Virus record (IMG/VR): IMGVR_UViG_3300033153_007973
Location: 1 to 64,000 of that record
Reading direction: 5' to 3' (one strand)
Length of the DNA stretch: 64,000 nt
A model generated the notes under the pieces. That model was given only the letters and a program-made list of their open reading frames with translations. It did no database searches and was not told the origin of the DNA. Shown in pieces: positions 4,293 to 52,149 of the stretch. Numbering within the stretch: the stretch's first letter is position 1; each line of letters starts with the position of its first letter. The translations under genes and the position numbers were made by a program.

Positions 4293-4688
4293 TTAATCCT
4301 CCTTTTTGAGCTGATCGATTTGTGTTTTTAGTTCGTTGATAATGTCTTCGTCGCCTAATCCGTAGTTTTGTAGCGTTTTTATAAATGCAGTAGATGCTTC
4401 TCTTAGTTTGCGAAGATCATCGAATATTTTCATTAGTCTTCGTCCTGCTATAAGAATATTTGGCCCAACTACTGATCTTGAGTTAAGACTTATTCTAATT
4501 TTCATACTTTCCATGCTACTAAATGATGTATTAATATGTACTTGCATATTTTCACACCATTTTATAACTGCTGCGAGAGTTGTTTGTTTCTCTCGTTTTC
4601 GGTGGGGATGGTTGATATTCAGTTTCTTGTCACTTGTGGGGTCAAATAATTGGCCATTTGGATCATTTTGTGCATGTTTTATTCTCAT
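4293..4688 (-). CDS. Hypothetical protein with N-terminal QLFDP motif
   Basis: 131-aa ORF in gene orientation. Confidence 0.6.
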   Translation of the reverse strand: MRIKHAQNDPNGQLFDPTSDKKLNINHPHRKREKQTTLAAVIKWCENMQVHINTSFSSMESMKIRISLNSRSVVGPNILIAGRRLMKIFDDLRKLREASTAFIKTLQNYGLGDEDIINELKTQIDQLKKED

Positions 4689-4694
4689 AGTTTG

Positions 4695-5096
4695 TTACGA
4701 ATCTCTTTTTGTCCTTTCCCACTCTAGAATACGTGGCATTACTGCTATCTTAAATGCTGTGAGGAGTTTATCAACTCCTTGTGCTGTTACATCATTAGAA
4801 ATCATAGATCTTTCAAGTGTAGCTATAATCTCACACCAAATTTTATTATATGGATCGATTACTTCTCTGATGTTTGACACAGCAATTTTAAGGTTTAAGC
4901 CACTACTACAGAGTTCCATTCCACAAGTGTTAGTTGTTACTCTCACTCCGTTATCTAGGAACTCAATTCTTGCGCGGTTTTCTTTGCACCATTCTTGTGC
5001 GTCTTCTTCCTCTTTCGTCTCTGTCTTCTTCTCTTCTTTAACTTCTTTGATTGGTTCTCCTGGGATGGGGTCGAAGATGTTGTCAATATCGGGCAT
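4695..5096 (-). CDS. Hypothetical protein with N-terminal DNIFDP motif
   Basis: 133-aa ORF with GAGGTG SD. Confidence 0.65.
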   Translation of the reverse strand: MPDIDNIFDPIPGEPIKEVKEEKKTETKEEEDAQEWCKENRARIEFLDNGVRVTTNTCGMELCSSGLNLKIAVSNIREVIDPYNKIWCEIIATLERSMISNDVTAQGVDKLLTAFKIAVMPRILEWERTKRDS

Positions 5097-5260
5097 ATGT
5101 CACCTCTGTATGGATCAAATAAGTCATCGTTACTTTTCAGGACTTTTGATCTCATTTTATTGCCTTCTTTAGTGCTAAGAATAGACAGAACGGCATGATG
5201 ATTATAACCACTACTGCAATAACTAGTATATTAGCTGATGGTGCTTCGCATTTTTCCATT

Positions 5261-5333
5261 TAGCAGGGACTGGATTCGAACCAGTGACCTAGTGGTTATG
5301 AGCCACTCAAGCTAACCTCTGCTCCACCCTGCT
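5261..5333 (-). tRNA. tRNA-Met(CAT), initiator-like D arm; no encoded CCA
   Basis: AGCAGGG/CCCTGCT acceptor, TGGAGCAG..GGTTAGCT D arm, anticodon loop CTCATAA, T loop TTCGAAT. Confidence 0.9.
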
Positions 5334-5381
5334 GTTGTTTCTGTTTTAACTTGTGATATTCCTTGAAAGCATAAAGAAAAA

Positions 5382-5697
5382 GCATCTTCTAATGACAGCC
5401 AGTTGTGTGTGGATGCCGAGAGTAGCTACACATGATCTGGATTTCTCCAGTGTCGGAATTCACCGAACACCATGTCGTAAGTCTTTTGTCCTGACACATG
5501 ATAACCCGAGTTTAGTCACCTGGGTAGGGTGTGAGTCGTGATGTCGTGAGTCATAAGTCGTTATATTTGAGTCGTGGATCGCTAATGCGATACCAATCTG
5601 AATATAGGTTTCAGGCCTATTCCTCAGTGAGTTTGATCACGATATCGTTCGTGTCAAGGACGCTCTCTATTTCCTCTGTTTACATCACAGAAGATGC
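5382..5697 (-). ncRNA. Candidate ~315-nt structured RNA with short internal repeats, downstream of the coiled-coil gene
   Basis: Ends pair (GCATCTTCT/AGAAGATGC) followed by a T run; internal repeats CACGAC/AACGAC/TATGAC/TACGAC; no credible ORF. Confidence 0.5.
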
Positions 5698-5706
5698 AGT
5701 TTTTGT

Positions 5707-6243: not shown

Positions 6244-6291
6244 TGTGTTCTCCTTTTAATCGTGATGTAATATAGCTGATACTTGACCATG

Positions 6292-6909: not shown

Positions 6910-6984
6910 TCTTTGATGTCATACTTCTTTAAGAACCACTTCATACGGAGTTTGGTCTTTAGGTTCATAAAAGATGCGACAACC

Positions 6985-9298: not shown

Positions 9299-9318
9299 GG
9301 TGGTGCCTCCTAGATAGG

Positions 9319-9347
9319 AGTGTACCACACATTCTAGTCATTGTCAA
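9319..9347 (-). promoter_or_regulatory. sigma70-type promoter for the HNH gene, overlapping an SD-sequestering hairpin
   Basis: TTGACA-17 nt-TACACT; GTGGT..CTCCT/AGGAG..ACCAC inverted repeat. Confidence 0.7.
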
Positions 9348-9350
9348 CGG

Positions 9351-10493: not shown

Positions 10494-10896
10494 AGTAATT
10501 ATCCTCTTCTTTTGTGGTCTCTTCCACGATAGTTTTCTGTCCTTTTCTTTCGTGAGATCTTAGCGTATTCGTAATATGTGCACCGAGAGTTGCATATCGT
10601 TCATTGGTTGAGCATGCGAGAATCCAGCCATCATCCATGGAGAAGATCTTGCTTTCGATCTCCATTGACTCCTTGTTTACGTAGGAAATCTTGTAAGATA
10701 CCTGATCATCTTCTGTATGGTAGAATCGCTTCTCTTCACCAGGTGATCTTGCTGCGTTGGTAAAGCACCAGTTGGCTTTTCCGACTGGTCCTTTTCCATA
10801 TTCTATCTTGTGGTTATCTCCGCACGTGAGACAGCCAATGAGAAAGATTCCGCATAGGAAACCGATGAGTCCGCCAGCCCAGAATTCTCCGTCCAT
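10486..10896 (-). CDS. Hypothetical membrane-anchored protein
   Basis: N-terminal hydrophobic helix. Confidence 0.55.
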   Translation of the reverse strand: MDGEFWAGGLIGFLCGIFLIGCLTCGDNHKIEYGKGPVGKANWCFTNAARSPGEEKRFYHTEDDQVSYKISYVNKESMEIESKIFSMDDGWILACSTNERYATLGAHITNTLRSHERKGQKTIVEETTKEEDNYYD

Positions 10897-11486
10897 TATT
10901 TCTTCTCCTTCTTTGTTATAACCTCATCGACGAGGCCATACTTGACTGCTTCCTCGGCAGTCATGTAATTATTTCTCTCAGTATCGATGGTGATCTTCTC
11001 GATTTTATGACCTGTATGATATGCCAGAATTTCGTCGAGCTTTCTCCTGGTCTTTTTCATCTCCTCGGCTTCGATCATGACATCTGTTTCCTGTCCGGAT
11101 GCGCCGCCAGCCACCTGGTGAATCATTACTTTTGCATTGGGTAGGATCTTACGTTTACCCTTAGCGCCCGCGGTCAGGAGAAGTGACCCCATAGAAGCAG
11201 CCATACCGATGCAGAGAGTACATACATCTGCCTCGATATATTGCATAGTATCATAAATGGCTAATCCCTCGGAGACAATACCACCCGGTGAATTGATATA
11301 GAAGAAGATATCTTTCTTGGGATCCTCAGCTTCAAGGAACAGAAGCTGCGCTGTGATCAATGCAGAGGAAACAGATTCAACTGCCCCATGAAGCATGACT
11401 ACTCGTTCTTTAAGCAGTCTGGAGAAGATATCATAGGATCGTTCACCTCTGCTGGTCTGTTCGATTACGACTGGTACGAGGTTCAT
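10896..11486 (-). CDS. clpP: ATP-dependent Clp protease proteolytic subunit
   Basis: [54 protein letters not shown]. Confidence 0.97.
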
Positions 11487-12774: not shown

Positions 12775-12794
12775 CTCATATCCTCCCAGATATG

Positions 12795-18300: not shown

Positions 18301-18831
18301 CTATATGATTTTCTTGTTGAAGAACTTGTATGCTTCTTGGTGTCGCCATTTGCTGATGGCCTTATAATACTCTTGTCGTCCTTTATGAGTGATAATTGTT
18401 ACCGGATACTTCTTGATCTTGTTCTCGCACCACAGTAAGAGCAAGCGACCGGTTCGGCCATTTCCATCCACAAATGGATGTGTTACTTCGAATGCATAGT
18501 GTACATTCATGCAGTCAATTGGCTTCTTTACTTCGTTGGCTGCCTTCACTACTCTCTCCAGCATACCAAGAATCTTGGTAGGAGGCGGACAGCTAAAGCC
18601 TCCTACTCTAACAGCAACAGGTCTGATAAGTCCTGTATAATGAGGAGGTAAGATCCCTTTCATCATGGTCTTATGCCAGTTAAGGATGTCCTGAATTATC
18701 AGGTTTTTCTTGGTTGTCAATGCTTTTGCTGCAGCTTTTAAGTGTTGGTCGAACTCCGGTGTTCCTGGATCCTCAAAGATGTCCTCGATAGCATTTGACT
18801 CACTAACTAGTTCTTCTATTCTGTTTTCCAC
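18301..18831 (-). CDS. Fic-domain protein
   Basis: HPFVDGNGRTGR canonical motif; ESNAIE. Confidence 0.93.
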   Translation of the reverse strand: MENRIEELVSESNAIEDIFEDPGTPEFDQHLKAAAKALTTKKNLIIQDILNWHKTMMKGILPPHYTGLIRPVAVRVGGFSCPPPTKILGMLERVVKAANEVKKPIDCMNVHYAFEVTHPFVDGNGRTGRLLLLWCENKIKKYPVTIITHKGRQEYYKAISKWRHQEAYKFFNKKII

Positions 18832-19196
18832 TTGTTACTCCTTAGTCTTTTTATATGGGTCAAATAGTTCATCTATACTGAATTTTCTCGACTTATGCTG
18901 CTTTCGTTTTGGCCGCTATTCTTGATATATGCTTTCTTCATCTTCTTTGTTATCTTATCTGACATATGCTACTCCTTCTTGATTATGAAACTAGTTCCTA
19001 CCATTACACTTTGCTCAATTTCTCTTCTTAGCCTTCTCAGCTTTAGGAAACTGAACATATATCGGAATTTAGGTATCTTGATGACGATAGTGTTATTTTC
19101 TCCTGGTTCTATTTTATACCAGTTGAAACCAAGGAATAACATGATTTGTTCATAATCATATATACTAACTAATGTTCTTAACATCTGTTACTCCTT

Positions 19197-23959: not shown

Positions 23960-24079
23960 ATGATTAACTGTGCCGAGTGTCGTTGGCAGACAACGCTCAT
24001 CAGGGTTTGTTCGCTGCCGCGACCCTGACCATCATAATACAACCAATCTGTCGTATATACGAGAGACACAGTTAATCAT
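23960..24079 (-). ncRNA. Candidate structured RNA between tmRNA and tRNA-Asn
   Basis: 13-bp terminal stem ATGATTAACTGTG/CACAGTTAATCAT enclosing three hairpins. Confidence 0.5.
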
Positions 24080-24081
24080 TT

Positions 24082-24457
24082 TGGACCCGGCGGCATCGAA
24101 GCCGCGTCCGCGATCTTTTCCCCTCAGAAAGTTTACTACCATTGGGAGCGAGCAAGCTCGCACGTTCCACCATCCCTTATTTAGCGACTAGGGAAGTCGT
24201 AACGAGTCCCTTTCGGGAGTAACTCCCTTCAGTGCGTGCCTCCCCGGGTACAGAAGGGTACTCTTGCCGGTTCAGCCCTGCACTCTTAAGCGCAGGCAAC
24301 GTTCTGGTTCATGGAACCGAAGTTCCCGACCAGAATCGTGTCGTTGGCGTTAGTTTCGTCAACTTTGGTTTGAATCCTCAGTTTTATGACTTAAGCATTC
24401 TTAGGTCAGGTAGCTTTCTTTGTTTACTAGAACCGCGTCGAAACCAATTTCGGGCCC
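24082..24457 (-). ncRNA. ssrA: tmRNA
   Basis: 5' GGGCCCGAAATTGGTTTCGAC and 3' GACGCGGCTTCGATGCCGCCGGGTCCA; G3-U acceptor wobble; tag ORF 24348-24286 reads ANDTILVGNFGSMNQNVACA*. Confidence 0.92.
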
Positions 24458-27093: not shown

Positions 27094-27963
27094 TCAGAAT
27101 GGAATGTCATTTTCAGCTACCTTTCTCACTTTCTTAAGTACAGGCTTAATCTTCTCCTCTTTCGCCATATCAGGTGCTAGTCCTTTCACATGTGCTGGAT
27201 CTAGTCGGCTGCCAATAACACCATTTCTAGAATCAAGGATATCAAGTAGATATTTACGTTCTTCTTCGTCTTCCTGTTTCTCTTTACTGAGATCAGTAGG
27301 TGCTCCACTGAGATATCCTCCAGTGTGCATCTTAAGATCTTCCCAATCATTAATAGCTAATGCATTGATTCCAACAGCTATTTTAGTAACATCTGCGCCG
27401 CGGATCTTATATCCGCGCTTGATAAACTTCATCATTCTGTAAAGAGTGCTGAATGGATATGGTAACTTATTGATTCGTAGCATACGTGACGCTACATCCT
27501 GTAGATAGTTCTGACTGCAGTTAATTATTCTAGTAAATGGATACCATGCTGCCATACATATCGTGAAGTCGAAGTTTTCTGTGATGAATGCAGGATCTCC
27601 TACTGGATCCTTGATAAACTGATAGAAATAGTTATCTATCTGTATATTAATAGCTCGCTTGCTTTCCTTCCATTTGTATCCTCGAATTACTAGACCTTTT
27701 CTTGACATACTTCTAGATCGATCGAATGATTTAAGATAGATACGTAGTTTCGTAATGAGTTCTTTGTGAGTACAGAAGATGTCGATATCACGAGGTTTCT
27801 CGCCTACGAAGAGTGACGTAATAGCACCTCCGGCCACGAAGAATGCACAATGCTCATTCTTCTTCCTAAGGACTTGAGAGTCCGCTATTTTGAGGAAGTC
27901 ACTAATAGGTTGTATTATCTGTGTGAGTGTATAAGTTTGATCCGGGGCTTCAATTTGGATCAT
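27094..27963 (-). CDS. Nucleotidyltransferase (tRNA-NTase / poly(A) polymerase head-like) with an SSB-like DIPF tail
   Basis: FVAGGAITSL..EKPRDIDIF, FDFTIC, RMMKFIKRGY; ends ENDIPF. Confidence 0.75.
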   Translation of the reverse strand: MIQIEAPDQTYTLTQIIQPISDFLKIADSQVLRKKNEHCAFFVAGGAITSLFVGEKPRDIDIFCTHKELITKLRIYLKSFDRSRSMSRKGLVIRGYKWKESKRAINIQIDNYFYQFIKDPVGDPAFITENFDFTICMAAWYPFTRIINCSQNYLQDVASRMLRINKLPYPFSTLYRMMKFIKRGYKIRGADVTKIAVGINALAINDWEDLKMHTGGYLSGAPTDLSKEKQEDEEERKYLLDILDSRNGVIGSRLDPAHVKGLAPDMAKEEKIKPVLKKVRKVAENDIPF

Positions 27964-28997: not shown

Positions 28998-29744
28998 CTA
29001 CCCATCTTTCTTTGCCCTCCCAGTTATACCGATTTGTCTGAGAATCGGTGTTATATTACCATGTGTAGAAGCACAATATGGCCATTTTGGATCAAATAAG
29101 AATGTGTTTGTATCTATTACTGGTGCTCTTATATTTACGATTATATTGTCCTTAAGTCTGTATTCCTGGTACTTTTTCTCATTGATTGCTTTTACTACTG
29201 AACAGTGATCTTCATCATCATCTGAGAAGTCCTCGTTTTCGAATATACACCATCCTCCGACACCACTCGGACTTTTCTCGTCTTCTTCGAGTGGATCAAC
29301 TTCTCCACAGATAAGTCTGTCTTCTTTATTTCGATTGAGTATTTCACAGTGTGGGTATTCTTTTATAACGTCATACTCATTTCTGCCAATCCACATTGCT
29401 CTTGATTCCTCTGATTTGCCGCCAGTTCTGGCACCTTCCCATATTGTGTAGAACTTCTCTATAGCTTCTAGGATACTGTCAGCTTCTATCATTATTTGAC
29501 TAGAACGTCTTCCCGTGAGATATCGTCTGATATTTGATGGTATTAGATCTTTCTTCTTATTGTATCTGAAGTATAATCCGACATTATCTACACATATGAG
29601 TTTCTCTGGTCCCCAATTTGTGGAACCCGAACTGCGGACCATTATTGGTATCTTGTATATAAATCTGGGGCTACTAGAGAATGGTTCTGGCAAGCCTGGC
29701 AATGTTCCTTGCATCGTCTCCACCATTATGAGGTCGTCCTTCAA
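28998..29744 (-). CDS. Hypothetical protein
   Basis: 248-aa ORF; start uncertain. Confidence 0.55.
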   Translation of the reverse strand: MKDDLIMVETMQGTLPGLPEPFSSSPRFIYKIPIMVRSSGSTNWGPEKLICVDNVGLYFRYNKKKDLIPSNIRRYLTGRRSSQIMIEADSILEAIEKFYTIWEGARTGGKSEESRAMWIGRNEYDVIKEYPHCEILNRNKEDRLICGEVDPLEEDEKSPSGVGGWCIFENEDFSDDDEDHCSVVKAINEKKYQEYRLKDNIIVNIRAPVIDTNTFLFDPKWPYCASTHGNITPILRQIGITGRAKKDG

Positions 29745-30243
29745 ATTCCATATTCTTTATTTTAAGGGCACTACTAACGCCTTTGCCCTTCTTAATCTTC
29801 TCTCTGAATGAGAACAGGGTCTTAATGTTAATATGAGAGTCTCTGAATGGATACTTGATTTGTTTACGATTGCATTCTCTATGGAATTGCTTACGATCAT
29901 AATCGCCCCAGGATGCCCAGACTGTATCTTTGAGCTTTGGCACAAGACGAATTAACTCATCTAGTGCTTCTTTCAAGGGTATTCCGCCTTCTGTAAGCTC
30001 TTCTTCAGTGTGTCCTGTGAGCTCTGTGCAGAACTCACTGATATCCATGACACTAGGTTTTACGAGTATGCTGCCGCTGGCAGATGTTCTCCAGTCTGGA
30101 TGTTGAATGATTGCCCATCCGATTTCGATGATCTCCATTTCTTTCTCGATCTTAGTTTGGAGTCCATCTTTAGCATCTGTATTTTTCCAACACGTTGCCT
30201 CTAAATCTATAATAAGTAGCTTGTTAAGTTCCGTCCTGGTCAT
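29674..30243 (-). CDS. DEDDh 3'-5' exonuclease (ERI-1/KapD-like)
   Basis: IIDLEATCW, EIIEIG, FCTELTG, WASWGDYD, HNGGDDARN. Confidence 0.9.
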   Translation of the reverse strand: MTRTELNKLLIIDLEATCWKNTDAKDGLQTKIEKEMEIIEIGWAIIQHPDWRTSASGSILVKPSVMDISEFCTELTGHTEEELTEGGIPLKEALDELIRLVPKLKDTVWASWGDYDRKQFHRECNRKQIKYPFRDSHINIKTLFSFREKIKKGKGVSSALKIKNMEFEGRPHNGGDDARNIARLARTIL

Positions 30244-30983
30244 TTGCTGCTTCCTCTTGTACTGGATTGAATATTTCATCTTGAGTGGGTTGTTTTGGTA
30301 ACTCTGCTTCACCGCGGCAGACTTTGATCATATGTCGCTTCTCAGCTTCGAGTATGTTTTCATCGATTTCAAAGAACTTGGCTAGTATTTTTGGAATGTT
30401 GTGATATCTATCTCCTGTTCTTAGATAGTCTTTCTCGTATGCCCATTCCATGAATTCCCCTATCTTCTGGGAATACTTTGCTACTTTATCTAGTTTGTCG
30501 TGTTCTGGATATCCGCTCATGTTTTTCTCCATGGATCGAATAGTTCACTCATAGTTGGCTTCGCTGGTTCTATAACTTTCTGTTTTCTAAGAGTAATCTC
30601 GAGTGTTGCTCTTGCTTCTTCCTTTTTAATGTAGTTCATAAATGAGTTCATGAATCTATTATCTACTATGAGTGTTTTCTCATCCATAGCTTGTCGAATA
30701 TCTTGTATCTCTGTAACTCTTCGTTCTAGTTCGTCTAATGTATCCATCATTTTATGAGTGCTAGCCATATTTCCTCCTAGACAATAGTACCCTTATCTTC
30801 CTTCGCTTCCTTAACAGCTTTATCGAATTCTTCTCTTCTCAGTGGATCTGGATCGAATAAATCATTCATTGATGGTTTGGGTACTGGTTTGAATACTATA
30901 GTAAACTTTGCGTATCCTGATGGGCTACCACCTCTGTCTATTCTGACGTAGCCAGGAGTATTAGTATTATATTCAGTGTTCAT
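30224..30983 (-). CDS. Three small hypothetical proteins (30224-30532, 30517-30768, 30777-30983), each with the [DE][LI]F[DN]P tag
   Basis: PTQDEIFNP, PTMSELFDP, PSMNDLFDP. Confidence 0.65.
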
Positions 30984-40737: not shown

Positions 40738-41112
40738 TTATTCTTTGACTTTCTTGATCATATCTTCGAGTGCTTCGTTTGCCAGCTTTGCAATATTACT
40801 GGGTATCTTTTTGACATCCTCATTATTCGCGATCTTCGGTAAAACATAGATCATCGACATTGTTTTGGATGTTGGAATCAGCACTGAGATGGGAGTAAAG
40901 ATGAGACAGATAATTATTCCCCATTTCATGATCGGCCAAGCTTTCTCTGCATCGCAATCGCATTGTCTTCCATCTCTGTCGAAATCACTATTAGCGACAT
41001 ATGCAATGCCGGATATTACAGCTGTAATAGATGATAATGCAGCTATTACGATACAGATTGAAGAGATAGCATCCAACCTCGTAATAATGTAAATTGTCCA
41101 GCCTAAACTCAT
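40738..41112 (-). CDS. Membrane protein (conserved phage type)
   Basis: IYIITRLD, two TMs, LIPTSKTM. Confidence 0.65.
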   Translation of the reverse strand: MSLGWTIYIITRLDAISSICIVIAALSSITAVISGIAYVANSDFDRDGRQCDCDAEKAWPIMKWGIIICLIFTPISVLIPTSKTMSMIYVLPKIANNEDVKKIPSNIAKLANEALEDMIKKVKE

Positions 41113-41396
41113 GTTATTCCTCCTATTGGATCGAATAGTTCTTCCTGTGTTATTTTTTGGCTCTTCTCTTTCTTGGCTTTTGACTGATGCTGAACAAGAT
41201 ATCCAACAATTTCTGCATTCTCTGTATGAATAAAGCTTCCTGTTGAGATTTTATTAGACATTGTGATGTTGTACCCGAGGCTGGATCCAAGTTTATCGTT
41301 TGTTTGTATATATAATGAATTGCATCTAAATACCTTCCCGACAAAATCATTATACCATGCTGTTGGCTGCTGTTTCTTAATGACCTTGATTAGCAT
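41109..41396 (-). CDS. Small hypothetical protein with C-terminal EELFDP tag
   Basis: WYNDFVGKVF; ends TQEELFDPIGGIT. Confidence 0.6.
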   Translation of the reverse strand: MLIKVIKKQQPTAWYNDFVGKVFRCNSLYIQTNDKLGSSLGYNITMSNKISTGSFIHTENAEIVGYLVQHQSKAKKEKSQKITQEELFDPIGGIT

Positions 41397-41508
41397 TGTT
41401 TTCTCTAAGTATATATTGTTAGTCTTGAGTTTAGCTATATTCTTGGATCGTAATACTGTATCAGAGACAATTCTTCGTCTCTCTGCTTTTGTTGCTGCGA
41501 ATAGTTCG

Positions 41509-42609
41509 CTACTCATCATGGCGTAAAAGCCAGTTCGGATTGACCACCTTGAACGAAAGTCGGCCTATATGGTCATCTCTGAGACTCTCATTGACTGATC
41601 TGATGACAATACCTTCTCTGATGTGATCGGGATAAATCTTGCTCATTCCTTTGGATATCTCGACCATTTCCTCTACTGAATTAGGTAGAGTAGTACTGTT
41701 CTCGAGTATGGGTACATGTTCAAATCCATATCTTTGGCAGAACTTAAGCATATCTTCAAAATCCAAGTACTTGGATGTTTGAAGGTCTAGAACGTTATAT
41801 ACAAAGACTTTGTGTTCCTTAAGTCTGTACTTGTTCTTCTGGATGCCAGGTCCGCAAAGCTCACCTTGTATGCAGATATCTTGGTTTACGCTACGTAGTT
41901 TCTCTTCGATACTATCTCTAAGTGCTACTACCCAGAATGTGTTTTGCTTCTTGGGTTTAGGTTTTATGAATAAGCTCTTGAACCATGCAGGAAAGCCTTT
42001 CTTCTCAATATCTGGAAGAATCTGCATATTCCTACTAGCAACACCGAATTCATCATCTCGGATCCAATATGATGCCGAGGAACCATCAAGTTTCTCTGTA
42101 ATATAGAATTGTTTATCGCAGTGTCGTCTAATAATTCCAGGTATTGTCTGAATTCTGTCTTCGTCTGTCTTTGGGATAAATCCTGGGCGTGTTTTCGTCC
42201 GGCGTCCGCTGAGCATAGCTGGCATCTGGGGCTCCCACTTGAGAATGCCCAGTACTTTGGTGACATCATCTCCAATCTGTAGTGCCTTGTCGCCTTCGGA
42301 TTGATCGATGATGCTCATAGGAAATGCAATACCCTGTGAGACTTGTTTACGCAGCTTGATGGTCTTAATTCGATATCCGCGGTCTTTGAGGAACTCGAAT
42401 TCAGGTCGTGGCGGTAGGATGCTATCTATTTCACAATAAACGCACTTGCTGCCGATTTTGAAGTCGTCCTTCTTGTTGATGACGACTTTCCACCCGAGGA
42501 TCGTCGCGACTTCGATTTGGTTCGCGTTCGGGATAGCTTTGATCGCTTTGATTTCTTGGATCGAGGCGAGCTTTCTGCTGATTTCGTTGTTACTGTTGTC
42601 TGTGACCAC
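41509..42609 (-). CDS. RNA ligase, Rnl2 / DRB0094 family
   Basis: RKLASIQ.I..I..I.NA..IE, VYCEIDS.LP, SQG, KTDEDRIQ, TEKLDGSS, QGELCGPGIQKN, EGIVIR, SFKVVN. Confidence 0.92.
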   Translation of the reverse strand: MVTDNSNNEISRKLASIQEIKAIKAIPNANQIEVATILGWKVVINKKDDFKIGSKCVYCEIDSILPPRPEFEFLKDRGYRIKTIKLRKQVSQGIAFPMSIIDQSEGDKALQIGDDVTKVLGILKWEPQMPAMLSGRRTKTRPGFIPKTDEDRIQTIPGIIRRHCDKQFYITEKLDGSSASYWIRDDEFGVASRNMQILPDIEKKGFPAWFKSLFIKPKPKKQNTFWVVALRDSIEEKLRSVNQDICIQGELCGPGIQKNKYRLKEHKVFVYNVLDLQTSKYLDFEDMLKFCQRYGFEHVPILENSTTLPNSVEEMVEISKGMSKIYPDHIREGIVIRSVNESLRDDHIGRLSFKVVNPNWLLRHDE

Positions 42610-42892: not shown

Positions 42893-43300
42893 TTATCTCC
42901 TATATGGGTCAAATAGGTCATTCATCGTTGCTGTAATTGCAGCGTGTGTTTCTATTACTGTAGGCTCCTTGTGCGCTATTGTCCATACAATGATATCTTC
43001 TATACCTATGGTCCAGTTGCAGTATCGATTAAGCTTTGAGATTACTTCTGTCTTAAATTCCTGGTGTGATATAACTGCGATGTCTCTTGGGCAACAATCC
43101 AGTAATATAGCTAATGCGAGTTGTGCTGGTCCCGATCCATTATATCCCCAACAGAATCCGTCTGGTGAGTGGCGAATCTCTTTTAGTGAGCGGTTTGGAG
43201 TTATCTGCTTTGGTAATTTTCCACTGCGATGTTTATATACAGTATATGTTTCATTGGGTGTTCCTGCATGAAGTATTACTCCTTGGTAATGGTCGCTCAT
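42893..43300 (-). CDS. DUF6166-like protein with C-terminal NDLFDP tag
   Basis: HSPDGFCWGYNGSGPAQLALAIL; ends TMNDLFDPYRR. Confidence 0.75.
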   Translation of the reverse strand: MSDHYQGVILHAGTPNETYTVYKHRSGKLPKQITPNRSLKEIRHSPDGFCWGYNGSGPAQLALAILLDCCPRDIAVISHQEFKTEVISKLNRYCNWTIGIEDIIVWTIAHKEPTVIETHAAITATMNDLFDPYRR

Positions 43301-43821
43301 TATTTCTTCCTTAGTGGGTCGAATAAGTCATTCATTGTAGGAGGCTTTATCTCCTTTGGTTTACGTTGCCACCATGATCTGGTTCTCTTTACTTTGCCTG
43401 GGAATATTACTTTCTCGATGTGTCTTGTATAGCATAGACTTAGTATTCTACCTTGATCATATGGAAAAGGTATCTTTACAGAAACATGGACATCTGCTCT
43501 TTTCGTAATCATTACTAGTCGACCTATGAGTTCTATTGGTACGTTTCCATGTACAGTCATTTCATCGTTGACTTGGATGTAATCTCCTATTCCATATTTT
43601 GGATATAATCTAACTGGTACGAGGCATTTGCCTTCGTACCATTCTATATCTTTATCCATTGATATGGATTTGCTTCTTTCTCGCCAAGTTTTAATCTTAA
43701 GCTTAAGTCTCCAGAACCATCCAGGTTTCTGGCCATTAGAACGAGTGGCAGTGATCATGGTGAATAGTATATGTCCGCAAACAGCACCACCTGCAATGAG
43801 CAAGACAGTATCAGCGCTCAT
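43300..43821 (-). CDS. Hypothetical protein (N-terminal TM) with NDLFDP tag
   Basis: Ends PTMNDLFDPLRKK. Confidence 0.65.
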   Translation of the reverse strand: MSADTVLLIAGGAVCGHILFTMITATRSNGQKPGWFWRLKLKIKTWRERSKSISMDKDIEWYEGKCLVPVRLYPKYGIGDYIQVNDEMTVHGNVPIELIGRLVMITKRADVHVSVKIPFPYDQGRILSLCYTRHIEKVIFPGKVKRTRSWWQRKPKEIKPPTMNDLFDPLRKK

Positions 43822-44257
43822 GCTTTCCTCCTATCGGATCGAATAGGTCATCACTTGTTGGCATATTTCTCTTTCTTGCGGTGTTCTTCTTTGCTGATTT
43901 AGATCGTTTCTTTCTTGTTAGAGCTACTCGAGCTTTTCCTATTTGTATATCGATTTGATGGAATACCTCCGTCATTGGAGTATTTGGAAAACCAGTAAGT
44001 TCGAATTCATATAACGTACGACCACTAAATGCTCGGGTATGAAATCTGATCTTTATTCCCCATAAATATTCAAGTCTGTCTTGATTATAATAAGATGTTC
44101 TCATATTATATGAGACATATAGTTTGTAGTCTTCACATATTTCACGCCAAAATCGCACATACTTCTTTACGGAAGTGATTCTATCTACTGTGGGTGGCTT
44201 AGGTATAATAATATGTATAGCTTCGAGCACTTTACCATTAATCGGTGGAATGGGCAT
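43811..44257 (-). CDS. Hypothetical protein with DDLFDP tag
   Basis: Ends PTSDDLFDPIGGKHER. Confidence 0.65.
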   Translation of the reverse strand: MPIPPINGKVLEAIHIIIPKPPTVDRITSVKKYVRFWREICEDYKLYVSYNMRTSYYNQDRLEYLWGIKIRFHTRAFSGRTLYEFELTGFPNTPMTEVFHQIDIQIGKARVALTRKKRSKSAKKNTARKRNMPTSDDLFDPIGGKHER

Positions 44258-45130
44258 CTTATCTCCTTATCTTATCTATACCGCTGATCATTCTCATAAC
44301 TACTATGCCTTGGAGCACGAATGAACCGATCTTCATAACTACTGATTCCACGGGGAATCCCATTCGTTTCACCAATACTATTGGTAGAGATAGATGAATA
44401 ACTCCTATTATTAAATGTAATAGTGCTACCATAATATCTAGATCACCTCCCTTGTCAAGCATATTTCTCTGAAATATGTCGACCAAGCTAAGCATTATTG
44501 TGAGGATATGTAGGCAGGGCGCTTTTGAACTTTTGTTGTGCGTTTGCGACTGGCTCCGCCACAAAGCCTTACACGCTAAGCTGTCGATAACTGACAGCCG
44601 GAGTTGAGAAACCAGAGGCGCGGTTCATGCCGAGTTTCGCAATTCCGGTGATCTGGGCTGCTGTTGTCGAAAACTGATAATATTCGACCCAACTAGCATT
44701 ACGCACGTAAGCTGTCGCTGACTGACGGGGCGGGACAATCACCTGTAATTTGAGGGTGTTGGAGGGGGATCCCTGGATCCGCATTTAAACAGAATTACAG
44801 GTGATTGTCGCTGTGTTACTGCTATTTGACATAGGCTGTAAATAGCATCGGCAAACAAGAGTATGCACGTTATTATCTATAACTGATGGTATTTGTTGTC
44901 GGTTGATGGGTCGTAAAACTGGAAGGAATTCTACCATTACGGCTATTAGGAGTTGTGAGCACGACTTTCATCTTTGCGCAAAAACAAAAGCTGTTGACTT
45001 TGTGCCTTTCAAATCAACAGCGGTTGTCTTTGCGTTGGCAAAGATGAAAGGTGGCGCGGAACAAATCCGGAGCTGTAAGTAGTATAGTAGTGCAAATCGG
45101 TATATGTGTGTCATCTAACTGCTGATGGAT

Positions 45131-49035: not shown

Positions 49036-49441
49036 GTTATTTCTCCTTCTTGAGATATGCTTCTTCTGCATCCAGGCACTTATCTATTCTGTGGAAGCCG
49101 TCCTTAGGTCTGGATCCTATGGATGTAAGCCATCGTCTTGCCAGATCGAATTGGGTGCACACGGGACCGCTTCCCTTTTCACAGTTACCACAGTGAGTAC
49201 CATTTAGATCAGGATTGATCTCGATAGTTATCTTCATGTTATTCCTCCGTGAGTTCGATTGTGAGAGGATGTTGATCCGTTAGTAACATGGCTCCAATAA
49301 TGGATGCTCTCACCATTTGGGGTGAGGGTCCGCGCCTAAGGACCACAGCTTTGTGCACGCTTCCGTCTGAAGATCTCCATGTACATGTGGCTTTGTATTC
49401 CTTGCCTTCCCGTCCGAGAAATTCTCTTAGCGTCATGGCTA

Positions 49442-49699
49442 TTACTCCTTATGGGGGTCGAATAAATCCGCTATGGATGCGACATCAGGGTAGGGTAATG
49501 GTGGTGGTCGTTGTGTCATAGTATCTTTGAATGAGCATAGAATAGAATACCGATTGTCATCGTGCATTCTGTCAGAGTCATGAATATAGTGTTTGCACTT
49601 CGTGCATTCATTTGCGCCCACTTTGTTTAAATATATGTATGGGCACTGTGTCATACATGCTCCGCTCACTCTTACGAGATAGTATATCTCTTCTGCCAT
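49442..49699 (-). CDS. Small Cys-rich protein with ADLFDP tag
   Basis: CPY..KVGANECTKC; ends SIADLFDPHKE. Confidence 0.6.
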   Translation of the reverse strand: MAEEIYYLVRVSGACMTQCPYIYLNKVGANECTKCKHYIHDSDRMHDDNRYSILCSFKDTMTQRPPPLPYPDVASIADLFDPHKE

Positions 49700-49935
49700 A
49701 TCATGTCTTCTCCCTTTCTTTTGTCCTAAGATCATGTATGACCTGATCCAGGAGTTTGACCAGTCCTTGTGCGGATTCGAGTGAGAGTATAATCTCTTTC
49801 TTATCGTTGTATTCAGTAGTAGATCCATCACCGATAAATATGTTTGCCTCTCCGGTATTTGGTGTTTGGTCATCGAGATTATATCCCACGGAGATAGTAC
49901 GGTCAGCCTCAAAAGTCTGTGTTATCGTTTCGCGT

Positions 49936-50151
49936 TTAAGCATGGTCATTCTCCTTATATGGATCAAATAATTCATCCACTGATTTGATTCGACTCTTCC
50001 AGTGACATATTATAAACTTTTGATCATAGTTTAGGTATCCTCCAGCATGAGGACATATATTAACACACCATATGGATCCTATGTATACTAGATGGTCTAT
50101 GTCAATTGGATGATGTGAACATGTTCCTTTCGTTTCTACTTTCGTGTCCAT
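49936..50151 (-). CDS. Small Cys-rich protein with DELFDP tag
   Basis: CSHH..IGSIWCVNIC; ends SVDELFDPYKENDHA. Confidence 0.6.
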   Translation of the reverse strand: MDTKVETKGTCSHHPIDIDHLVYIGSIWCVNICPHAGGYLNYDQKFIICHWKSRIKSVDELFDPYKENDHA

Positions 50152-50624
50152 ATAGTTACATTGTTGTGTTTCTCCATGGGTTTCAGGCATGGTCTGACTT
50201 CCTGAGGGGTTAGCCCTCCATATCCAATACCAGGATAGTTTAGATGATACTGTTGTTTGGGATTGTCTTGTGCTATTTTGGTTAAGCACTCAGTAGAGTA
50301 TTTAATAAGTTCTAGTGTTGATGGCTGCTTATAGTGCGTCTTGGTCTGGAAGATGCCAGCATCACCACGTCGTGATGTGCTGTCCCATTCTTTATCATTG
50401 TCTATTGGTTGTAGTATTAATGTTCCATAGATCCCCATGGAACCACACGATTCTCGTATGGTCTTACCAGCTACTTCTGGTAGCCACCAGAATGTGTTAC
50501 GGGCTTGGAGCGCTGCACCTGCGCCCATAACAAGACAACCATTAGCAAGCACGATGGAGTTTGTGGTAACGATAATGATCTCGTTTTCTGGTACATAGAA
50601 CATGTTACCCTTTCTAAAGTTCAT
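50136..50624 (-). CDS. Macro-domain-like (ADP-ribose binding/processing) protein
   Basis: KGNMF, VTTN...G.LVMGAGAA, FQTK.H, PGIGYGGL. Confidence 0.75.
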   Translation of the reverse strand: MNFRKGNMFYVPENEIIIVTTNSIVLANGCLVMGAGAALQARNTFWWLPEVAGKTIRESCGSMGIYGTLILQPIDNDKEWDSTSRRGDAGIFQTKTHYKQPSTLELIKYSTECLTKIAQDNPKQQYHLNYPGIGYGGLTPQEVRPCLKPMEKHNNVTIWTRK

Positions 50625-51580
50625 ATTTATTCTCCTCGTTTTGTATAATGCTAAAATTCGTGATATTTCCATCTTGTCTCTCTAGTGTCCATAAGAAGTG
50701 TCCTCGAGATATCCGAGTTTTGTGATCCCATCTAAGTGCAGCTAGAGGCCTGAGTCTGTGTTTTTTGTTTGTGATGGATCGTGCTTCAATATAGATATCA
50801 ACAATGGTTGCTGGTCTTTTGAAGATGTGGTTGTCATCGATATCACGTGAGCCCACTTTAACATAGAGCTCATTGCACATACACATGACTCGATCACCAG
50901 CTTGCCAACCTGTATCGTTGGTGTGGTAGTCTTTCATGTGATTTCGTATCCTGTGACAGCTTCACCTACGACAACTGAATTTCCAATCCAGAATGTCATT
51001 GGCCGATCGTTTCTGCCAGATCGAATAAGCTCTTTAAAGCACTCGAGCTCTTCAGGGCTGTAACACACGGCACATGCGGTAAATGCGCCGTTGTCCACGA
51101 GTACCATGAGACGTTCTCCTCCGCTGAATTCTGCGGTGATGAAGTCACTCATCTTAATCTGCATGGCATTCTTCTCGAGCCATTCTTCTTTGGTCATGTT
51201 CTTCGGATTGATGTAATCTCCCATGTTATTCCTCCGTTATATTAAAATATCCTGTGAGCCAAGAAGCTGGCTTCGACACTTGCTGAGTAGTACTCCGATA
51301 CGCAAATCTCTTCTCCCATTCCTATCATGGATACTAAGGTGTAGGGGATTATTGCGTGACTCACACTCGGGATGGTTCGGCGAGGACACGATAATCAAGC
51401 TGTGTATCAAATCTCAATAAGCTCCACCTCTTCTCAACTCACAAGATATTGTATACAATAAAATGAGACGCTGAACCATACTCACATATTAGTAGACAAT
51501 GAGTCCTCACAAGCACTCTCGCCATAGAGGTGGATGGGTCAACGCCTCTGATCTTATGTGTATATAGCTTTGCCGGATTC

Positions 51581-51883
51581 CTAATCGGTTACCGGTCGAG
51601 GTGCGCCGATTCCCTTACTTATATTAAGATATTCTGCTATCACGTGACCGTGGCAAGCTTTTGGTGAACAGTAACATACGATATGTTTCCCTCGTAGTTC
51701 TGATACTGCCTTAAAGAATGTAGTATCATTGCGCATTCTTTCATGAAAGTGTTTCTCGAACTTCTCGATAACTTGTGTTCTGTCTCCATCCTTACCTATT
51801 ACGTAGGGATTACCATAGGGAGAACCACGGCCGATATATACGTCTCCAGGTTTCTTGTCCTTAATGTGACCTACAGTTGTCAT
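51581..51883 (-). CDS. DUF4326 protein
   Basis: DVYIGRGSPYGNPY, ELRGK...CYCSPKACHGHVI. Confidence 0.85.
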   Translation of the reverse strand: MTTVGHIKDKKPGDVYIGRGSPYGNPYVIGKDGDRTQVIEKFEKHFHERMRNDTTFFKAVSELRGKHIVCYCSPKACHGHVIAEYLNISKGIGAPRPVTD

Positions 51884-52149
51884 GATTTCTCCCGATGTGG
51901 ATCGAATATCTCATCCATTGTAGGTTGAGGTAGTGCTGGTATGTGTTGTGTTCTCTTGGCTTCAGGATAGTGACAGTAAACTAAACCTGTGATGCTGATG
52001 TCGGTTGCGCGAATTACTTCCTTACCGTCGAAGCACTTACAGGTTTGACATCTTATCGAGCTTACTCTACATGGTTGGTGATGTGGGCATGGTGGATTAG
52101 TTATACTTGATGTACCATATACTTGCACTGTATATCTATGTGTATGCAT
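51880..52149 (-). CDS. Small Cys-rich protein with DEIFDP tag
   Basis: CPHH..RVSSIRCQTC; ends QPTMDEIFDPHREKS. Confidence 0.65.
   Translation of the reverse strand: MHTHRYTVQVYGTSSITNPPCPHHQPCRVSSIRCQTCKCFDGKEVIRATDISITGLVYCHYPEAKRTQHIPALPQPTMDEIFDPHREKS

What the first reader, a model, noticed from the sequence alone, without database searches (positions are those of the whole stretch)
4293..52149. A second dispersed peptide tag, [ST]-x-x-[DE]-[LI]-F-D-P, on ~14 unrelated minus-strand ORFs
Seen at or near C-termini: PTQDEIFNP (30224 gene), PTMSELFDP (30517), PSMNDLFDP (30777), ITQEELFDP (41109), ATMNDLFDP (42893), PTMNDLFDP (43300), PTSDDLFDP (43811), ASIADLFDP (49442), KSVDELFDP (49936) and PTMDEIFDP (51880). 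Also KSNDDLFDP (~5110) and FSIDELFDP (~18855, frame lacks an obvious start). It is N-terminal in the two genes just upstream of the large RNAP (GQLFDP, DNIFDP). The variable bases fall at wobble positions (TTY GAY CCN), and the copies I found are read in the FDP frame, which favours a protein motif. The tag is even appended to a recognisable domain (DUF6166-like). Established: PIP-box and T4 gp45-binding peptides have a similar [ST]-hydrophobic-x-x-hydrophobic-F shape; QPTMDEIF fits Qxx[M]xx[hydrophobic]F. Inference: a short linear motif that docks many accessory proteins on one hub (sliding clamp, RNAP or Clp ATPase). With the GLIP tag, the phage appears to use two separate address labels.
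Basis: partly seen in the sequence, partly recalled or inferred. Interest (0 to 1): 0.88.

Follow-up and report, generated by a model that had tools for sequence, protein, structure and literature searches.

The report
Shared clamp-like docking tail, phage proteins
A large uncultured phage has put the same eight-residue tail ([ST]-x-x-[DE]-[LI]-F-D-P) on about twenty otherwise unrelated small proteins; a variant also ends its DNA polymerase, so the tail is most likely an address label for the DNA sliding clamp, though binding is untested.

Summary
[LI]FDP occurs 11 times in the predicted minus-strand proteins against 0.22 in shuffles. Its DNA form TATTYGAYCC occurs 14 times against 0.71 expected, 13 of them on the coding strand and all in the F-D-P frame.

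It is a translated peptide motif:
- Variation falls at synonymous sites, and Ser uses both TCN and AGY codons.
- Copies also sit at N-termini and inside proteins, with other codons and no ribosome-binding site nearby.
- The protein bodies are unrelated.
- None of 119 DUF6166 homologues from other genomes carries the tail.
- No conserved RNA fold, Rfam family or promoter/terminator signal coincides with it.

Walking the 234-kb genome added about six copies. The family-B DNA polymerase ends in ..ELVDIFDVSGNIL, a variant of the tag at the position where such polymerases carry their clamp-binding peptide. A DnaX/gp44-like clamp loader is encoded. The core x-[DE]-[LI]-F matches bacterial clamp-binding motifs (QL[SD]LF; Qx[DE][LM]F of Mu Mor/MuC) and resembles the T4 gp43/gp55 tails (PSLDFLY).

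Best reading: a sliding-clamp docking motif (about 0.5). Rivals are a degron or adaptor tag for the phage ClpA-ClpP system, another hub, or a coupled mRNA-level role.

Open points: no clamp gene was identified, the Leu/Ile codon is almost always NTA, and two copies lie outside credible ORFs.

The parts
51898..51921 (-). Tag TMDEIFDP, 5 residues before the stop of ORF 51880-52149 (89 aa, Cys-rich)
49960..49983 (-). Tag SVDELFDP, 7 residues before the stop of ORF 49936-50151 (71 aa from ATG 50151, Cys/His-rich)
49454..49477 (-). Tag SIADLFDP, 3 residues before the stop of ORF 49442-49873/49912 (CxxC-rich; 27% identical over 85 aa to the 51880 protein)
43835..43858 (-). Tag TSDDLFDP, 7 residues before the stop of ORF 43811-44257 (148 aa; basic linker before the tag)
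43315..43338 (-). Tag TMNDLFDP, 4 residues before the stop of ORF 43300-43821 (173 aa; N-terminal hydrophobic helix)
42905..42928 (-). Tag TMNDLFDP, 3 residues before the stop of ORF 42893-43300 (135 aa; DUF6166 at residues 36-106)
41127..41150 (-). Tag TQEELFDP, 5 residues before the stop of ORF 41109-41519 (136 aa)
30849..30872 (-). Tag SMNDLFDP, 23 residues before the stop of ORF 30777-30983 (68 aa); no ribosome-binding site next to it
30532..30555 (-). Tag TMSELFDP, 4 residues before the stop of ORF 30517-30768 (83 aa)
30263..30286 (-). Tag variant TQDEIFNP, 12 residues before the stop of ORF 30224-30532 (102 aa; phrog_21869)
29088..29111 (-). Weaker copy TNTFLFDP (same DNA core TTATTTGATCCA), 29 residues before the stop of ORF 28998-29744 (248 aa)
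18856..18879 (-). Orphan copy SIDELFDP in a 26-codon open frame without a start codon, 24 nt before the GTG of the Fic-domain gene 18301-18831. A 30-codon ORF ends 8 nt upstream in another frame, and a one-base length change in the A-run between them would join the two.
5111..5134 (-). Orphan or leader copy SNDDLFDP, 14 nt before the ATG of gene 4695-5096. It lies in a 66-codon ORF (4955-5155) that overlaps that gene out of frame and was not called by JGI.
5067..5090 (-). N-terminal copy: residues 3-10 (DIDNIFDP) of ORF 4695-5096 (133 aa), second gene upstream of the RNAP gene; Ile codon is ATC
4638..4661 (-). N-terminal copy PNGQLFDP (residues 10-17) of ORF 4293-4688 (131 aa), directly upstream of the RNAP gene; start codon uncertain
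608..4234 (-). Context: single-chain beta/beta'-fused RNA polymerase (1208 aa). Its C-terminal tail holds a clamp-motif-like IVSLF 17 residues from the end.
10896..11486 (-). Context (rival hub): phage ClpP protease. Its ClpA-like ATPase lies just past the window start (L127:1204-3396).

Best explanation
The element is a translated short linear motif, P-[ST]-[MIVQ]-x-[DE]-[LI]-F-D-P. It sits in a basic or proline-rich tail at the C-terminus, less often at the N-terminus, of about twenty mostly orphan proteins of one roughly 234-kb phage.

It most likely works as a sliding-clamp-binding peptide. The hydrophobic [LI]-F pair and the upstream hydrophobic residue would plug the clamp's hydrophobic cleft. 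This would tether the tagged proteins to the ring that the phage's own clamp loader puts on DNA, in the way the polymerase tail is tethered.

What is shown:
- The motif exists, is far beyond chance and is read as protein.
- It is appended to unrelated bodies.
- A variant ends the phage DNA polymerase.
- A clamp loader is encoded.

What is inferred:
- That the tag binds a clamp.
- That the clamp is beta-type. It could be the phage's own (ORF L129:5742-6911 is a weak candidate) or the host's.
- That the two N-terminally tagged genes in front of the RNAP gene, and the RNAP tail IVSLF, couple transcription to the clamp as in T4 and Mu.

The tight spacing to the next gene follows from economy. The tag is placed at the very end of the ORF, followed by just enough codons (3-7) to carry the next gene's ribosome-binding site.
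For: Peptide rather than DNA:
- All 13 coding-strand TATTYGAYCC copies are in the F-D-P frame of an open frame, and 11 are inside credible ORFs.
- Codon positions 1 and 2 of F and P are invariant, and those of D are invariant but for one Asn copy, while their third positions vary (C8/T4, T8/C4, A10/C1/G1). Thr uses ACA/ACG/ACT and Ser uses TCA/TCC/AGT.
- Copies at N-termini and inside proteins use other codons (ATC, ATG, CTG) and have no adjacent ribosome-binding site.
- The bodies are unrelated in all-against-all BLASTP, apart from one pair.
- None of 119 DUF6166 homologues carries the tail.
- No consensus RNA structure, no Rfam family at the sites, and sigma-70-like promoters and terminators at chance level and not at the sites.

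Clamp:
- I noted the polymerase test before seeing the sequence. The family-B polymerase ends ..QEAIELVDIFDVSGNIL. My estimate of the chance of hydrophobic-x-[DE]-[LI]-F-D falling in its last 15 residues is about 1e-4.
- Its nearest solved relatives are archaeal PolB enzymes. From established knowledge, these bind PCNA through a C-terminal peptide.
- A clamp loader is encoded (phrog_5846 7e-48; Pfam DNA_pol3_delta2).
- T4 tails read from NC_000866 are gp43 ..KASLDFLFG and gp55 ..SPSLDFLYEAND. They are described as shared, interchangeable, hydrophobic-acidic clamp-binding tails on unstructured linkers (PMC2988020; PMC7892883).
- The bacterial consensus is QL[SD]LF (PMC9690074).
[quoted passage not shown] The Mor/MuC family consensus is Qx[D/E][L/M]F (PMC12867686).
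- The relaxed pentapeptide [QMILV]x[DES][LIM]F is about 10 times denser within 30 residues of termini than in interiors across 199 proteins.
Against: - No sliding-clamp gene was recognised by Pfam, PHROGs or NCBIfam in the roughly 131 kb examined.
- The best candidate, L129:5742-6911 (389 aa), is only weakly DnaN-like. It is the top hit of a DnaN HMM among 408 ORF segments (E 0.004). hhalign gives P 0.017, colinear over 230 columns, but it ranks only 2nd of 143 in an hhalign null. phmmer against PDB sequences and NCBIfam gave no DnaN match.
- Q at position 1 of the bacterial motif is present in only 2 copies.
- The invariant D-P after the Phe has no counterpart in known clamp motifs.
- The ligase, UDG, RecA-like proteins, primase-helicase and loader lack the tag.
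- The tagged proteins have no recognisable DNA-related domains, and one has an N-terminal membrane helix.
- The Leu/Ile codon is NTA in 13 of 14 copies next to a ribosome-binding site, against about one third genome-wide.
- Two copies lie outside credible ORFs.
- A ClpA-like ATPase and ClpP are encoded, and tagged genes flank the RNAP-Clp operon.
Confidence: 0.5

Rival explanations
1. Degron or adaptor-docking tag for the phage's own ClpA-like/ClpP protease. The N-domain of the phage Clp ATPase recognises the tail, so that a set of early proteins is removed, or delivered, on schedule.
For: - The phage encodes ClpP (Pfam 1e-76).
- It encodes a two-ring ClpA-like ATPase (TIGR02639 5.5e-117; AAA_2 plus ClpB_D2-small). 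That ATPase has an MGF tripeptide where ClpA has its ClpP-docking loop (loop position recalled from memory).
- The ATPase gene follows the RNAP gene. It is flanked by two N-terminally tagged genes upstream and a doubly tagged 256-aa gene downstream.
- The phage also encodes a tmRNA, so tag-directed proteolysis is part of its biology.
- The tags sit mostly on small orphan proteins near C-termini.
Against: - The motif is never at the extreme terminus. It is followed by 3 to 29 variable residues, and it also occurs at N-termini and in tandem inside a protein.
- The DNA polymerase carries a variant at the canonical clamp-binding position.
- The phage tmRNA tag frame (ending ..NQNVACA) is unrelated to the motif.
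- No known Clp recognition motif resembles it (from memory; not tested).
Confidence: 0.17
2. Docking motif for another hub: the phage's single-chain RNA polymerase, the 559-aa AAA protein, SSB, a recombinase, or a host protein.
For: - Two paralogous-looking genes with N-terminal copies lie directly upstream of the RNAP gene.
- The evidence that it is a peptide and sits at termini fits any hub equally well.
Against: - No precedent and no specific evidence for any of these hubs.
- The polymerase tail and the match to clamp motifs favour the clamp.
Confidence: 0.13
3. The primary role is in cis, at the mRNA or nascent-chain level. Options are a translated arrest or coupling peptide ending in Pro, or an RNA processing or standby site, placed 11-17 nt before the next start codon to tune expression of the downstream gene.
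For: - The distance from the CCA codon to the next ATG is 11-19 nt in 9 of 12 window copies, most often 14. The ribosome-binding site starts 1-4 nt after the motif.
- The NTA codon is near-invariant, and T-ending Asp/Asn codons and CCA are over-used.
- The one C-terminal copy with ATC is the one whose ribosome-binding site is 17 nt away.
- Two copies lie before genes without being the end of a credible ORF. One of them looks like a 15-codon leader peptide.
Against: - The same peptide occurs at residues 2-10 of proteins and inside proteins, far from any start codon and with different codons.
- A copy 23 residues from a C-terminus has no ribosome-binding site near it.
- There is no conserved RNA structure.
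- General A-richness upstream of ribosome-binding sites does not reach the NTA position.
- The spacing is equally explained by a terminal tag plus the minimal codons needed for the next ribosome-binding site.
Confidence: 0.1
4. A junction scar with no function of its own. A tail-plus-ribosome-binding-site cassette serves as microhomology for shuffling gene cassettes, as proposed for promoter-stem-loop cassettes in T4-type phages (from memory), and the peptide is a passenger.
For: - Tagged genes cluster in runs (30.2-31.0 kb, 42.9-44.3 kb, 49.4-50.2 kb).
- DNA identity exceeds what the peptide requires.
- The tag is specific to this phage. The only RNAP relative (32% identity) has none in 38 genes.
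Against: - Variation is concentrated at synonymous sites, which indicates purifying selection on the peptide.
- DNA similarity fades within about 20 nt on either side of the motif.
- N-terminal and internal copies, and the polymerase variant, cannot be junction scars.
Confidence: 0.07

Closest known systems
Bacterial beta-clamp-binding motif (QL[SD]LF; Qx[D/E][L/M]F and QPDLF in phage Mu Mor/MuC)
   Same: - Pentapeptide ending [DE/S]-[LIM]-F.
- Placed at N- or C-termini of many unrelated client proteins, including small phage transcription factors.
- Two window copies read Q-x-[DE]-[LI]-F exactly (TQEELF, TQDEIF).
- The system has a DnaX-like loader (PMC9690074, PMC12867686).
   Different: - Position 1 is usually M, I or V rather than Q.
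- There is a conserved [ST] before the pentapeptide and an invariant D-P after the Phe.
- About twenty clients in one phage, nearly all orphans.
- The clamp itself is not identified and binding is untested.
T4-family sliding-clamp-binding tails of gp43, gp55 and gp33 (SCBM)
   Same: - One hydrophobic-acidic tail shared by the DNA polymerase and by small non-replication proteins.
- Joined to the body by a variable linker.
- Skeleton P/A-S-L-D-F-L-[FY] against P-[ST]-M-x-[DE]-L-F (PMC2988020; PMC7892883).
   Different: - T4 has three to four such clients; here there are about twenty.
- No gp45-like gene was detected.
- The RNAP is phage-encoded and single-chain, not the host enzyme.
- Here the polymerase copy is the divergent one (no S/T, V instead of P).
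PIP-box of PCNA partners (Qxx[ILM]xx[FY][FY])
   Same: - Terminal docking peptide.
- Spacing of the hydrophobic residues (M at position 4, [LI]-F at positions 7-8).
- The polymerase is of the archaeal PolB type.
   Different: - No double aromatic.
- Q is present in 2 copies only.
- No PCNA-like gene was found.
ssrA-type and other Clp degrons
   Same: - Short C-terminal tag on unrelated proteins.
- The phage has tmRNA, ClpP and a ClpA-like ATPase.
   Different: - The tag is not at the extreme C-terminus and is also found at N-termini and internally.
- The sequence is unrelated to the phage tmRNA tag.

Membership tests
Bacterial beta-clamp-binding motif (CBM) | Pentapeptide Q-L-[SD]-L-F or a near variant (Qx[DE][LM]F) | tested here: inconclusive
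   Positions 3-5 ([DE]-[LI]-F) are met in nearly all copies. Position 1 is Q in only 2 copies and M, I, V, S or N in the rest (consensus taken).
Bacterial beta-clamp-binding motif (CBM) | Located in an exposed N- or C-terminal tail of otherwise unrelated proteins | tested here: met
   Seven of 11 copies lie within 12 residues of a C-terminus (P about 3e-5) and two are at N-termini. The bodies are unrelated.
Bacterial beta-clamp-binding motif (CBM) | Present on the replicative polymerase of the same system | tested here: met
   The family-B polymerase ends ..ELVDIFDVSGNIL, a variant of the tag 6 residues from the end.
Bacterial beta-clamp-binding motif (CBM) | A clamp and a clamp loader in the system | tested here: inconclusive
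   The loader is found (phrog_5846 7e-48). The clamp is not recognised. L129:5742-6911 is only weakly DnaN-like. About 104 kb of the genome was not examined, and the host clamp is unknown.
Bacterial beta-clamp-binding motif (CBM) | Physical binding in the clamp's hydrophobic cleft | not testable with these tools
   No complex prediction or experiment is available.
T4-type clamp-binding tail (SCBM) | Hydrophobic-acidic C-terminal tail shared by the polymerase and other clients, on a variable linker | tested here: met
   T4 gp43 ..ASLDFLFG and gp55 ..PSLDFLYEAND, against P-[ST]-M-x-[DE]-L-F-D-P and the polymerase tail.
T4-type clamp-binding tail (SCBM) | gp45-like trimeric clamp encoded by the phage | tested here: inconclusive
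   No gp45 or PCNA family hit in Pfam or PHROGs for the ORFs tested. The genome is not fully covered.
PIP-box | Q-x-x-[ILM]-x-x-[FY]-[FY] | tested here: not met
   No copy has the double aromatic, and Q is at position 1 in 2 copies only.
Clp/ssrA-type degron | Recognition element at the free terminus; resemblance to the system's tmRNA tag | tested here: not met
   Three to 29 variable residues follow the motif. The phage tmRNA tag frame ends ..NQNVACA. Recognition by the phage Clp N-domain itself is not testable here.
Nucleic-acid element (promoter, processing site, structured RNA) | Independence from reading frame; conservation not tied to codon position; conserved structure or known family | tested here: not met
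   All 13 coding-strand copies are in one frame. Variation falls at third codon positions. There are no conserved pairs, no Rfam hit, and promoter and terminator scans are at chance. The residual NTA bias stays unexplained.

The most novel reading that the evidence does not exclude
This phage uses a sliding clamp as a general address hub for a whole class of small orphan proteins: zinc-ribbon-like proteins, a DUF6166 protein, a VWA protein and a membrane-anchored protein. The same hub would serve factors of its own single-chain RNA polymerase, giving clamp-coupled transcription by a non-host polymerase. Possibly the same 24 nt are also constrained at the mRNA level (NTA codon, fixed distance to the next start codon), making the tag a dual-coded element.
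Probability: 0.25. Interest if true: 0.8.

Novelty: new variant of a known kind. Interest (0 to 1): 0.62.

Why it matters
Terminal clamp-binding peptides are known for a handful of clients per system. T4 has three or four, and Mu's Mor/MuC were shown only recently.

A single phage that stamps one stereotyped tail on about twenty orphan proteins would make its clamp (or another hub) a recruitment platform for accessory and possibly host-takeover functions.

It would also give an immediate experimental handle on proteins that otherwise have no annotation. One peptide, one bait and one set of point mutants could assign a location of action to about twenty unknown genes.

It would extend replication-coupled transcription, seen in T4 and Mu, to a phage with its own fused beta/beta' RNA polymerase.

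The unexplained codon-level constraint makes it a possible case of overlapping protein and RNA constraints.

Tried and rejected
1. Relatives.
- megablast of 15.5 kb against 50,697 phage records found nothing.
- The RNAP has one homologue (32% identity) among 5.8e9 proteins. Its contig (L123) has no tag system.
2. Collection scan for ANGANNTATTCGATCCA returned only chance hits in unrelated contigs.
3. Scan with an alignment of the tails. The second matched 95 stretches, about chance level, and only the query was confirmed.
4. Literature search for DLFDP/ELFDP/FDP motif found nothing relevant.
5. Hunt for the clamp.
- Pfam, PHROGs and NCBIfam on about 50 ORFs gave no clamp family.
- PDB sequence search of three candidates gave no clamp match.
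- The 218-aa ORF next to the SbcC-like gene (T4-like synteny) has a membrane helix and is an orphan.
- The 267-aa ORF carries a radical-SAM-type Cys motif.
- The 389-aa ORF has no homologues by word search and only weak DnaN similarity.
- Phages with the closest loader or PolB have no annotated clamp nearby.
7. The idea that GATCC pairs with the 16S 3' end was rejected. It lies on the wrong side of the ribosome-binding site, and only part of the copies have GATCC.
8. T-loop mimicry was rejected. TTCGAYCC also hits four tRNA genes, but the flanks do not pair.
9. A-richness upstream of ribosome-binding sites was tested as the cause of NTA and does not reach that position.
10. The loader's N-terminal RLSEMFP is the conserved AAA+ box, not a tag.
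11. Cluster look-up for natural variants of tagged proteins found all singletons.

Full report
**What the window is.** The window is the first 64 kb of a 234-kb IMG/VR contig (3300033153_007973). A second, 120-kb contig from a sister sample shares the RNAP gene at 100% identity. The window has no DNA relatives among 50,697 phage records. Its 1208-aa RNA polymerase is a single chain that fuses beta-like and beta'-like parts (Pfam Rpb2_6 and Rpb1_2). That protein has a single 32% homologue among 5.8 billion proteins. Nearly all genes from position 1 to about 60.4 kb are on the minus strand, and a plus-strand operon starts at 60591. Walking the contig showed that the same transcription block continues past the window start into contig positions 234 to about 183 kb. 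It is therefore a block of about 111 kb.

**Observation.**
- [LIMV]F[DN]P occurs 15 times in the three minus-strand frames and 3 times in the plus frames.
- In a non-overlapping minus-strand ORF set (138 ORFs, 18,761 codons), [LI]FDP occurs 11 times. Residue shuffles give 0.22, with a maximum of 3 in 2000.
- [DE][LI]FDP occurs 8 times against 0.02.
- LFDP is the single most enriched tetrapeptide of the proteome.
- At DNA level TATTYGAYCC has 14 matches against 0.71 +/- 0.83 in dinucleotide-preserving shuffles. Thirteen are on the coding strand.
- Seven of 11 [LI]FDP copies lie within 12 residues of a C-terminus (P about 3e-5).

The consensus over 12 copies is P-[ST]-[MIVQ]-x-[DE]-[LI]-F-D-P. 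It is usually preceded by a Lys/Arg/Pro-rich stretch.

All 13 coding-strand copies of the DNA core are read as F-D-P in an open frame. Eleven are inside credible ORFs and none is out of frame within a longer gene.

The pattern of variation is the coding one. Codon positions 1 and 2 of Phe and Pro are invariant, and those of Asp are invariant but for one Asn copy, while their third positions vary. Thr is written ACA, ACG and ACT. Ser is written TCA, TCC and AGT.

The same peptide also occurs where no downstream ribosome-binding site is near, and with other codons:
- residues 3-10 of gene 4695-5096 (ATC);
- the N-terminal region of 4293-4688;
- outside the window, residues 2-9 of a VWA protein (MSDAELFDP, CTG);
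- two tandem copies near the end of a 256-aa protein (GEMFDP with ATG, DSLFDP with CTG).

All-against-all BLASTP finds similarity between tagged proteins only in the tail, except one Cys-rich pair (27% over 85 aa). The 42893-43300 protein is a DUF6166 domain (1e-20, residues 36-106) with the tail added. None of 119 DUF6166 homologues from other genomes has the tail. Six tagged ORFs were called with identical boundaries by the JGI pipeline.

On the nucleic-acid side:
- Ten sites aligned with flanks give no consensus RNA pairs.
- Rfam finds only tRNAs and a tmRNA in the window.
- Sigma-70-like promoters and intrinsic terminators are at chance level and do not coincide with the sites.

I conclude that the motif is a translated, selected peptide.

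**What remains odd at the DNA level.** The Leu/Ile codon is TTA, CTA or ATA in all 12 window copies of the C-terminal type, and in 13 of 14 when the flanks are included. These codons make up only about one third of Leu and Ile codons in the genome. The single exception (ATC) is the copy whose ribosome-binding site is 17 nt away rather than 1-4 nt. The N-terminal and internal copies use ATC, ATG, CTG, CTG, TTA and TTA.

Asp/Asn at the x position are always T-ending (9 of 9), and Pro is CCA in 10 of 12. The general A-richness just upstream of ribosome-binding sites does not extend to the NTA position.

Two copies are not at the end of a credible gene.
- 18856-18879 lies in a 26-codon frame without a start. 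It follows, out of frame, a 30-codon ORF, and a one-base length change in an A-run would join them.
- 5111-5134 lies 14 nt before the start of gene 4695-5096, in an uncalled 66-codon ORF.
Both lie between a tRNA gene and the next gene.

The regular spacing (CCA to the next ATG mostly 11-17 nt) needs no separate function. The motif itself cannot encode a ribosome-binding site. A tag placed at the very end of an ORF in a tightly packed operon must therefore be followed by the 3-7 codons that carry the next gene's site, and the stop/start arrangements differ from copy to copy. The excess DNA identity is best explained by recent common descent or gene conversion of a tail-plus-ribosome-binding-site cassette. 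A second, mRNA-level constraint is not excluded.

**Which hub?** Before seeing it, I noted that the phage DNA polymerase should be checked for the tail. The contig walk found a replication module:
- UDG, SSB, RecA-like proteins, an SbcC-like protein and a Cas4-like nuclease;
- an 815-aa family-B polymerase;
- a helicase, a DnaX/gp44-like clamp loader, NrdD/NrdG, an SNF2 helicase with an intein, and a primase-helicase.

The polymerase ends ..QEAIELVDIFDVSGNIL. This is hydrophobic-x-D-I-F-D six residues from the end, a variant of the tag. By residue frequencies such a match in the last 15 residues of one named protein has a probability of about 1e-4. The nearest solved relatives of this polymerase are archaeal PolB enzymes. 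It is established knowledge that these, like T4/RB69 gp43 and E. coli Pol II, bind their clamp through a C-terminal peptide.

I read the T4 tails from the T4 genome: gp43 ..KASLDFLFG and gp55 ..SPSLDFLYEAND. Published work supports the comparison:
- T4 reviews describe these tails and that of gp33 as highly similar, hydrophobic and acidic. They are interchangeable, joined by an unstructured linker, and bind the clamp's hydrophobic patch (PMC2988020; PMC7892883).
- The bacterial consensus is QL[SD]LF (PMC9690074).
- Phage Mu's MuC uses QHDLF at its N-terminus and QPDLF at its C-terminus. The Mor/MuC family consensus is Qx[D/E][L/M]F (PMC12867686).

The tag's core, x-[DE]-[LI]-F, fits these. Two copies (TQEELF, TQDEIF) fit exactly.

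A relaxed pentapeptide, [QMILV]x[DES][LIM]F, is about ten times denser within 30 residues of termini than in interiors across 199 proteins of this phage. The hits include IVSLF, 17 residues from the end of the RNAP.

Further tagged proteins outside the window are:
- a 97-aa protein (..PNFIFDPTLKEK);
- a 108-aa zinc-ribbon-like protein (..PSMDDIFDPHKEE..);
- the VWA protein;
- the 256-aa protein after the Clp ATPase.

A partial copy (NDMLFDP) sits in a plus-strand gene at about 67 kb.

**Weak points of the clamp reading.** I could not identify a clamp gene. Pfam, PHROGs and NCBIfam gave nothing on about 50 candidate ORFs. The 389-aa ORF L129:5742-6911, between the polymerase and the loader, is the best candidate.
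- It is the best hit of a DnaN profile built from E. coli and eight phage DnaN proteins, among 408 ORF segments (E 0.004).
- It aligns colinearly with DnaN over 230 columns (hhalign P 0.017).
- BLASTP aligns residues 62-107 to DnaN 62-109.
- However, it is only second of 143 in an hhalign null, and it has no match in PDB sequences or NCBIfam.

It is a lead, not a finding. About 104 kb of the genome was not examined, and the host clamp is unknown.

Other weak points are that Q is mostly absent from position 1, the invariant D-P has no known counterpart, and classical clients (ligase, UDG) lack the tag.

**Rivals.** The strongest rival is the phage's own Clp system.
- ClpP is at 10896-11486.
- A ClpA-like two-ring ATPase lies directly downstream of the RNAP gene.
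- Tagged genes sit on both sides of that operon, and a phage tmRNA is at 24079-24457.

Against it:
- The motif is never at the free end.
- It also occurs N-terminally and internally.
- It is on the polymerase.
- It is unrelated to the tmRNA tag frame.

A cis-acting role, as an arrest peptide or an mRNA site before the next gene, explains the spacing, the codon bias and the two orphan copies. It does not explain the N-terminal and internal copies or the polymerase tail. A pure recombination scar is contradicted by the synonymous-site pattern.

**Verdict.** The reading as a protein motif is well supported (about 0.9). A docking function is likely. The sliding clamp is the best-supported hub (about 0.5 overall) but is unproven. 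This is a new variant of a known kind (clamp-binding tails), unusual for its stereotypy, for the number of orphan clients, and for the residual codon-level constraint.

Noticed in passing
window 24079-24457 (-): Phage-encoded tmRNA (Rfam RF00023, 49.4 bits against a gathering score of 47). ARAGORN did not report it. The tag reading frame, ending at the loop UAA, finishes ..NQNVACA.
   Followed up: partly
window 10896-11486 (-); L127:1204-3396: Complete phage Clp system. It has ClpP (Pfam 1e-76) and a ClpA-like two-ring ATPase (TIGR02639 5.5e-117) directly downstream of the RNAP gene. The ATPase has an MGF tripeptide where ClpA has its ClpP-docking loop.
   Followed up: partly
window 608-4234 (-): Single-chain RNA polymerase that fuses beta-like and beta'-like parts (1208 aa). 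It has only one homologue (32% identity, 879 aa) among 5.8e9 proteins. Its C-terminal tail carries IVSLF 17 residues from the end.
   Followed up: partly
window 27094-27963 (-): A 289-aa protein ends ..ENDIPF, like the C-terminal tip of bacterial SSB (D-D-D-I-P-F, recalled from memory). It may be a second borrowed docking tail.
   Followed up: no
window 18301-18831 (-): Fic-domain protein (PF02661 in the precomputed hits) with an N-terminal ..SNAIEDIFEDP.., a tag-like sequence with one extra residue. The orphan tag copy lies 24 nt upstream of its start codon.
   Followed up: partly
L129:5742-6911 (contig about 209-210 kb): A 389-aa orphan between the polymerase and the clamp loader with weak, colinear similarity to beta clamps (DnaN HMM E 0.004; hhalign P 0.017). 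It is a candidate clamp, not established.
   Followed up: partly
window 5261-33341 (11 genes); L134:12303-17646 (20 genes): At least 31 tRNA genes, including four tRNA-Leu and an array of 20 on the plus strand just past the window end.
   Followed up: no
window 44681-44690 (+): The only plus-strand TATTCGACCC (reads ..IIFDPTS.. in an open plus frame), antisense to ORF 44569-44784. Probably chance.
   Followed up: no
L127-L133 (contig 177-234 kb): The replication and repair module includes anaerobic NrdD/NrdG, an intein in a 1250-aa SNF2-type helicase, a Rad52-like protein, two RecA-like proteins, a radical-SAM-like 267-aa ORF and a 913-aa glycosyltransferase. The window itself holds NAD synthase, RtcB, an RNA ligase, a DNA ligase and a NADAR domain.
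   Followed up: no
window 42893-44257, 30224-30983, 49442-50151: Tagged genes come in runs of two or three neighbours. The three copies written ATGAATGAY (M-N-D) are in two adjacent genes plus one at 30.8 kb, which suggests local copying of the tail.
   Followed up: partly
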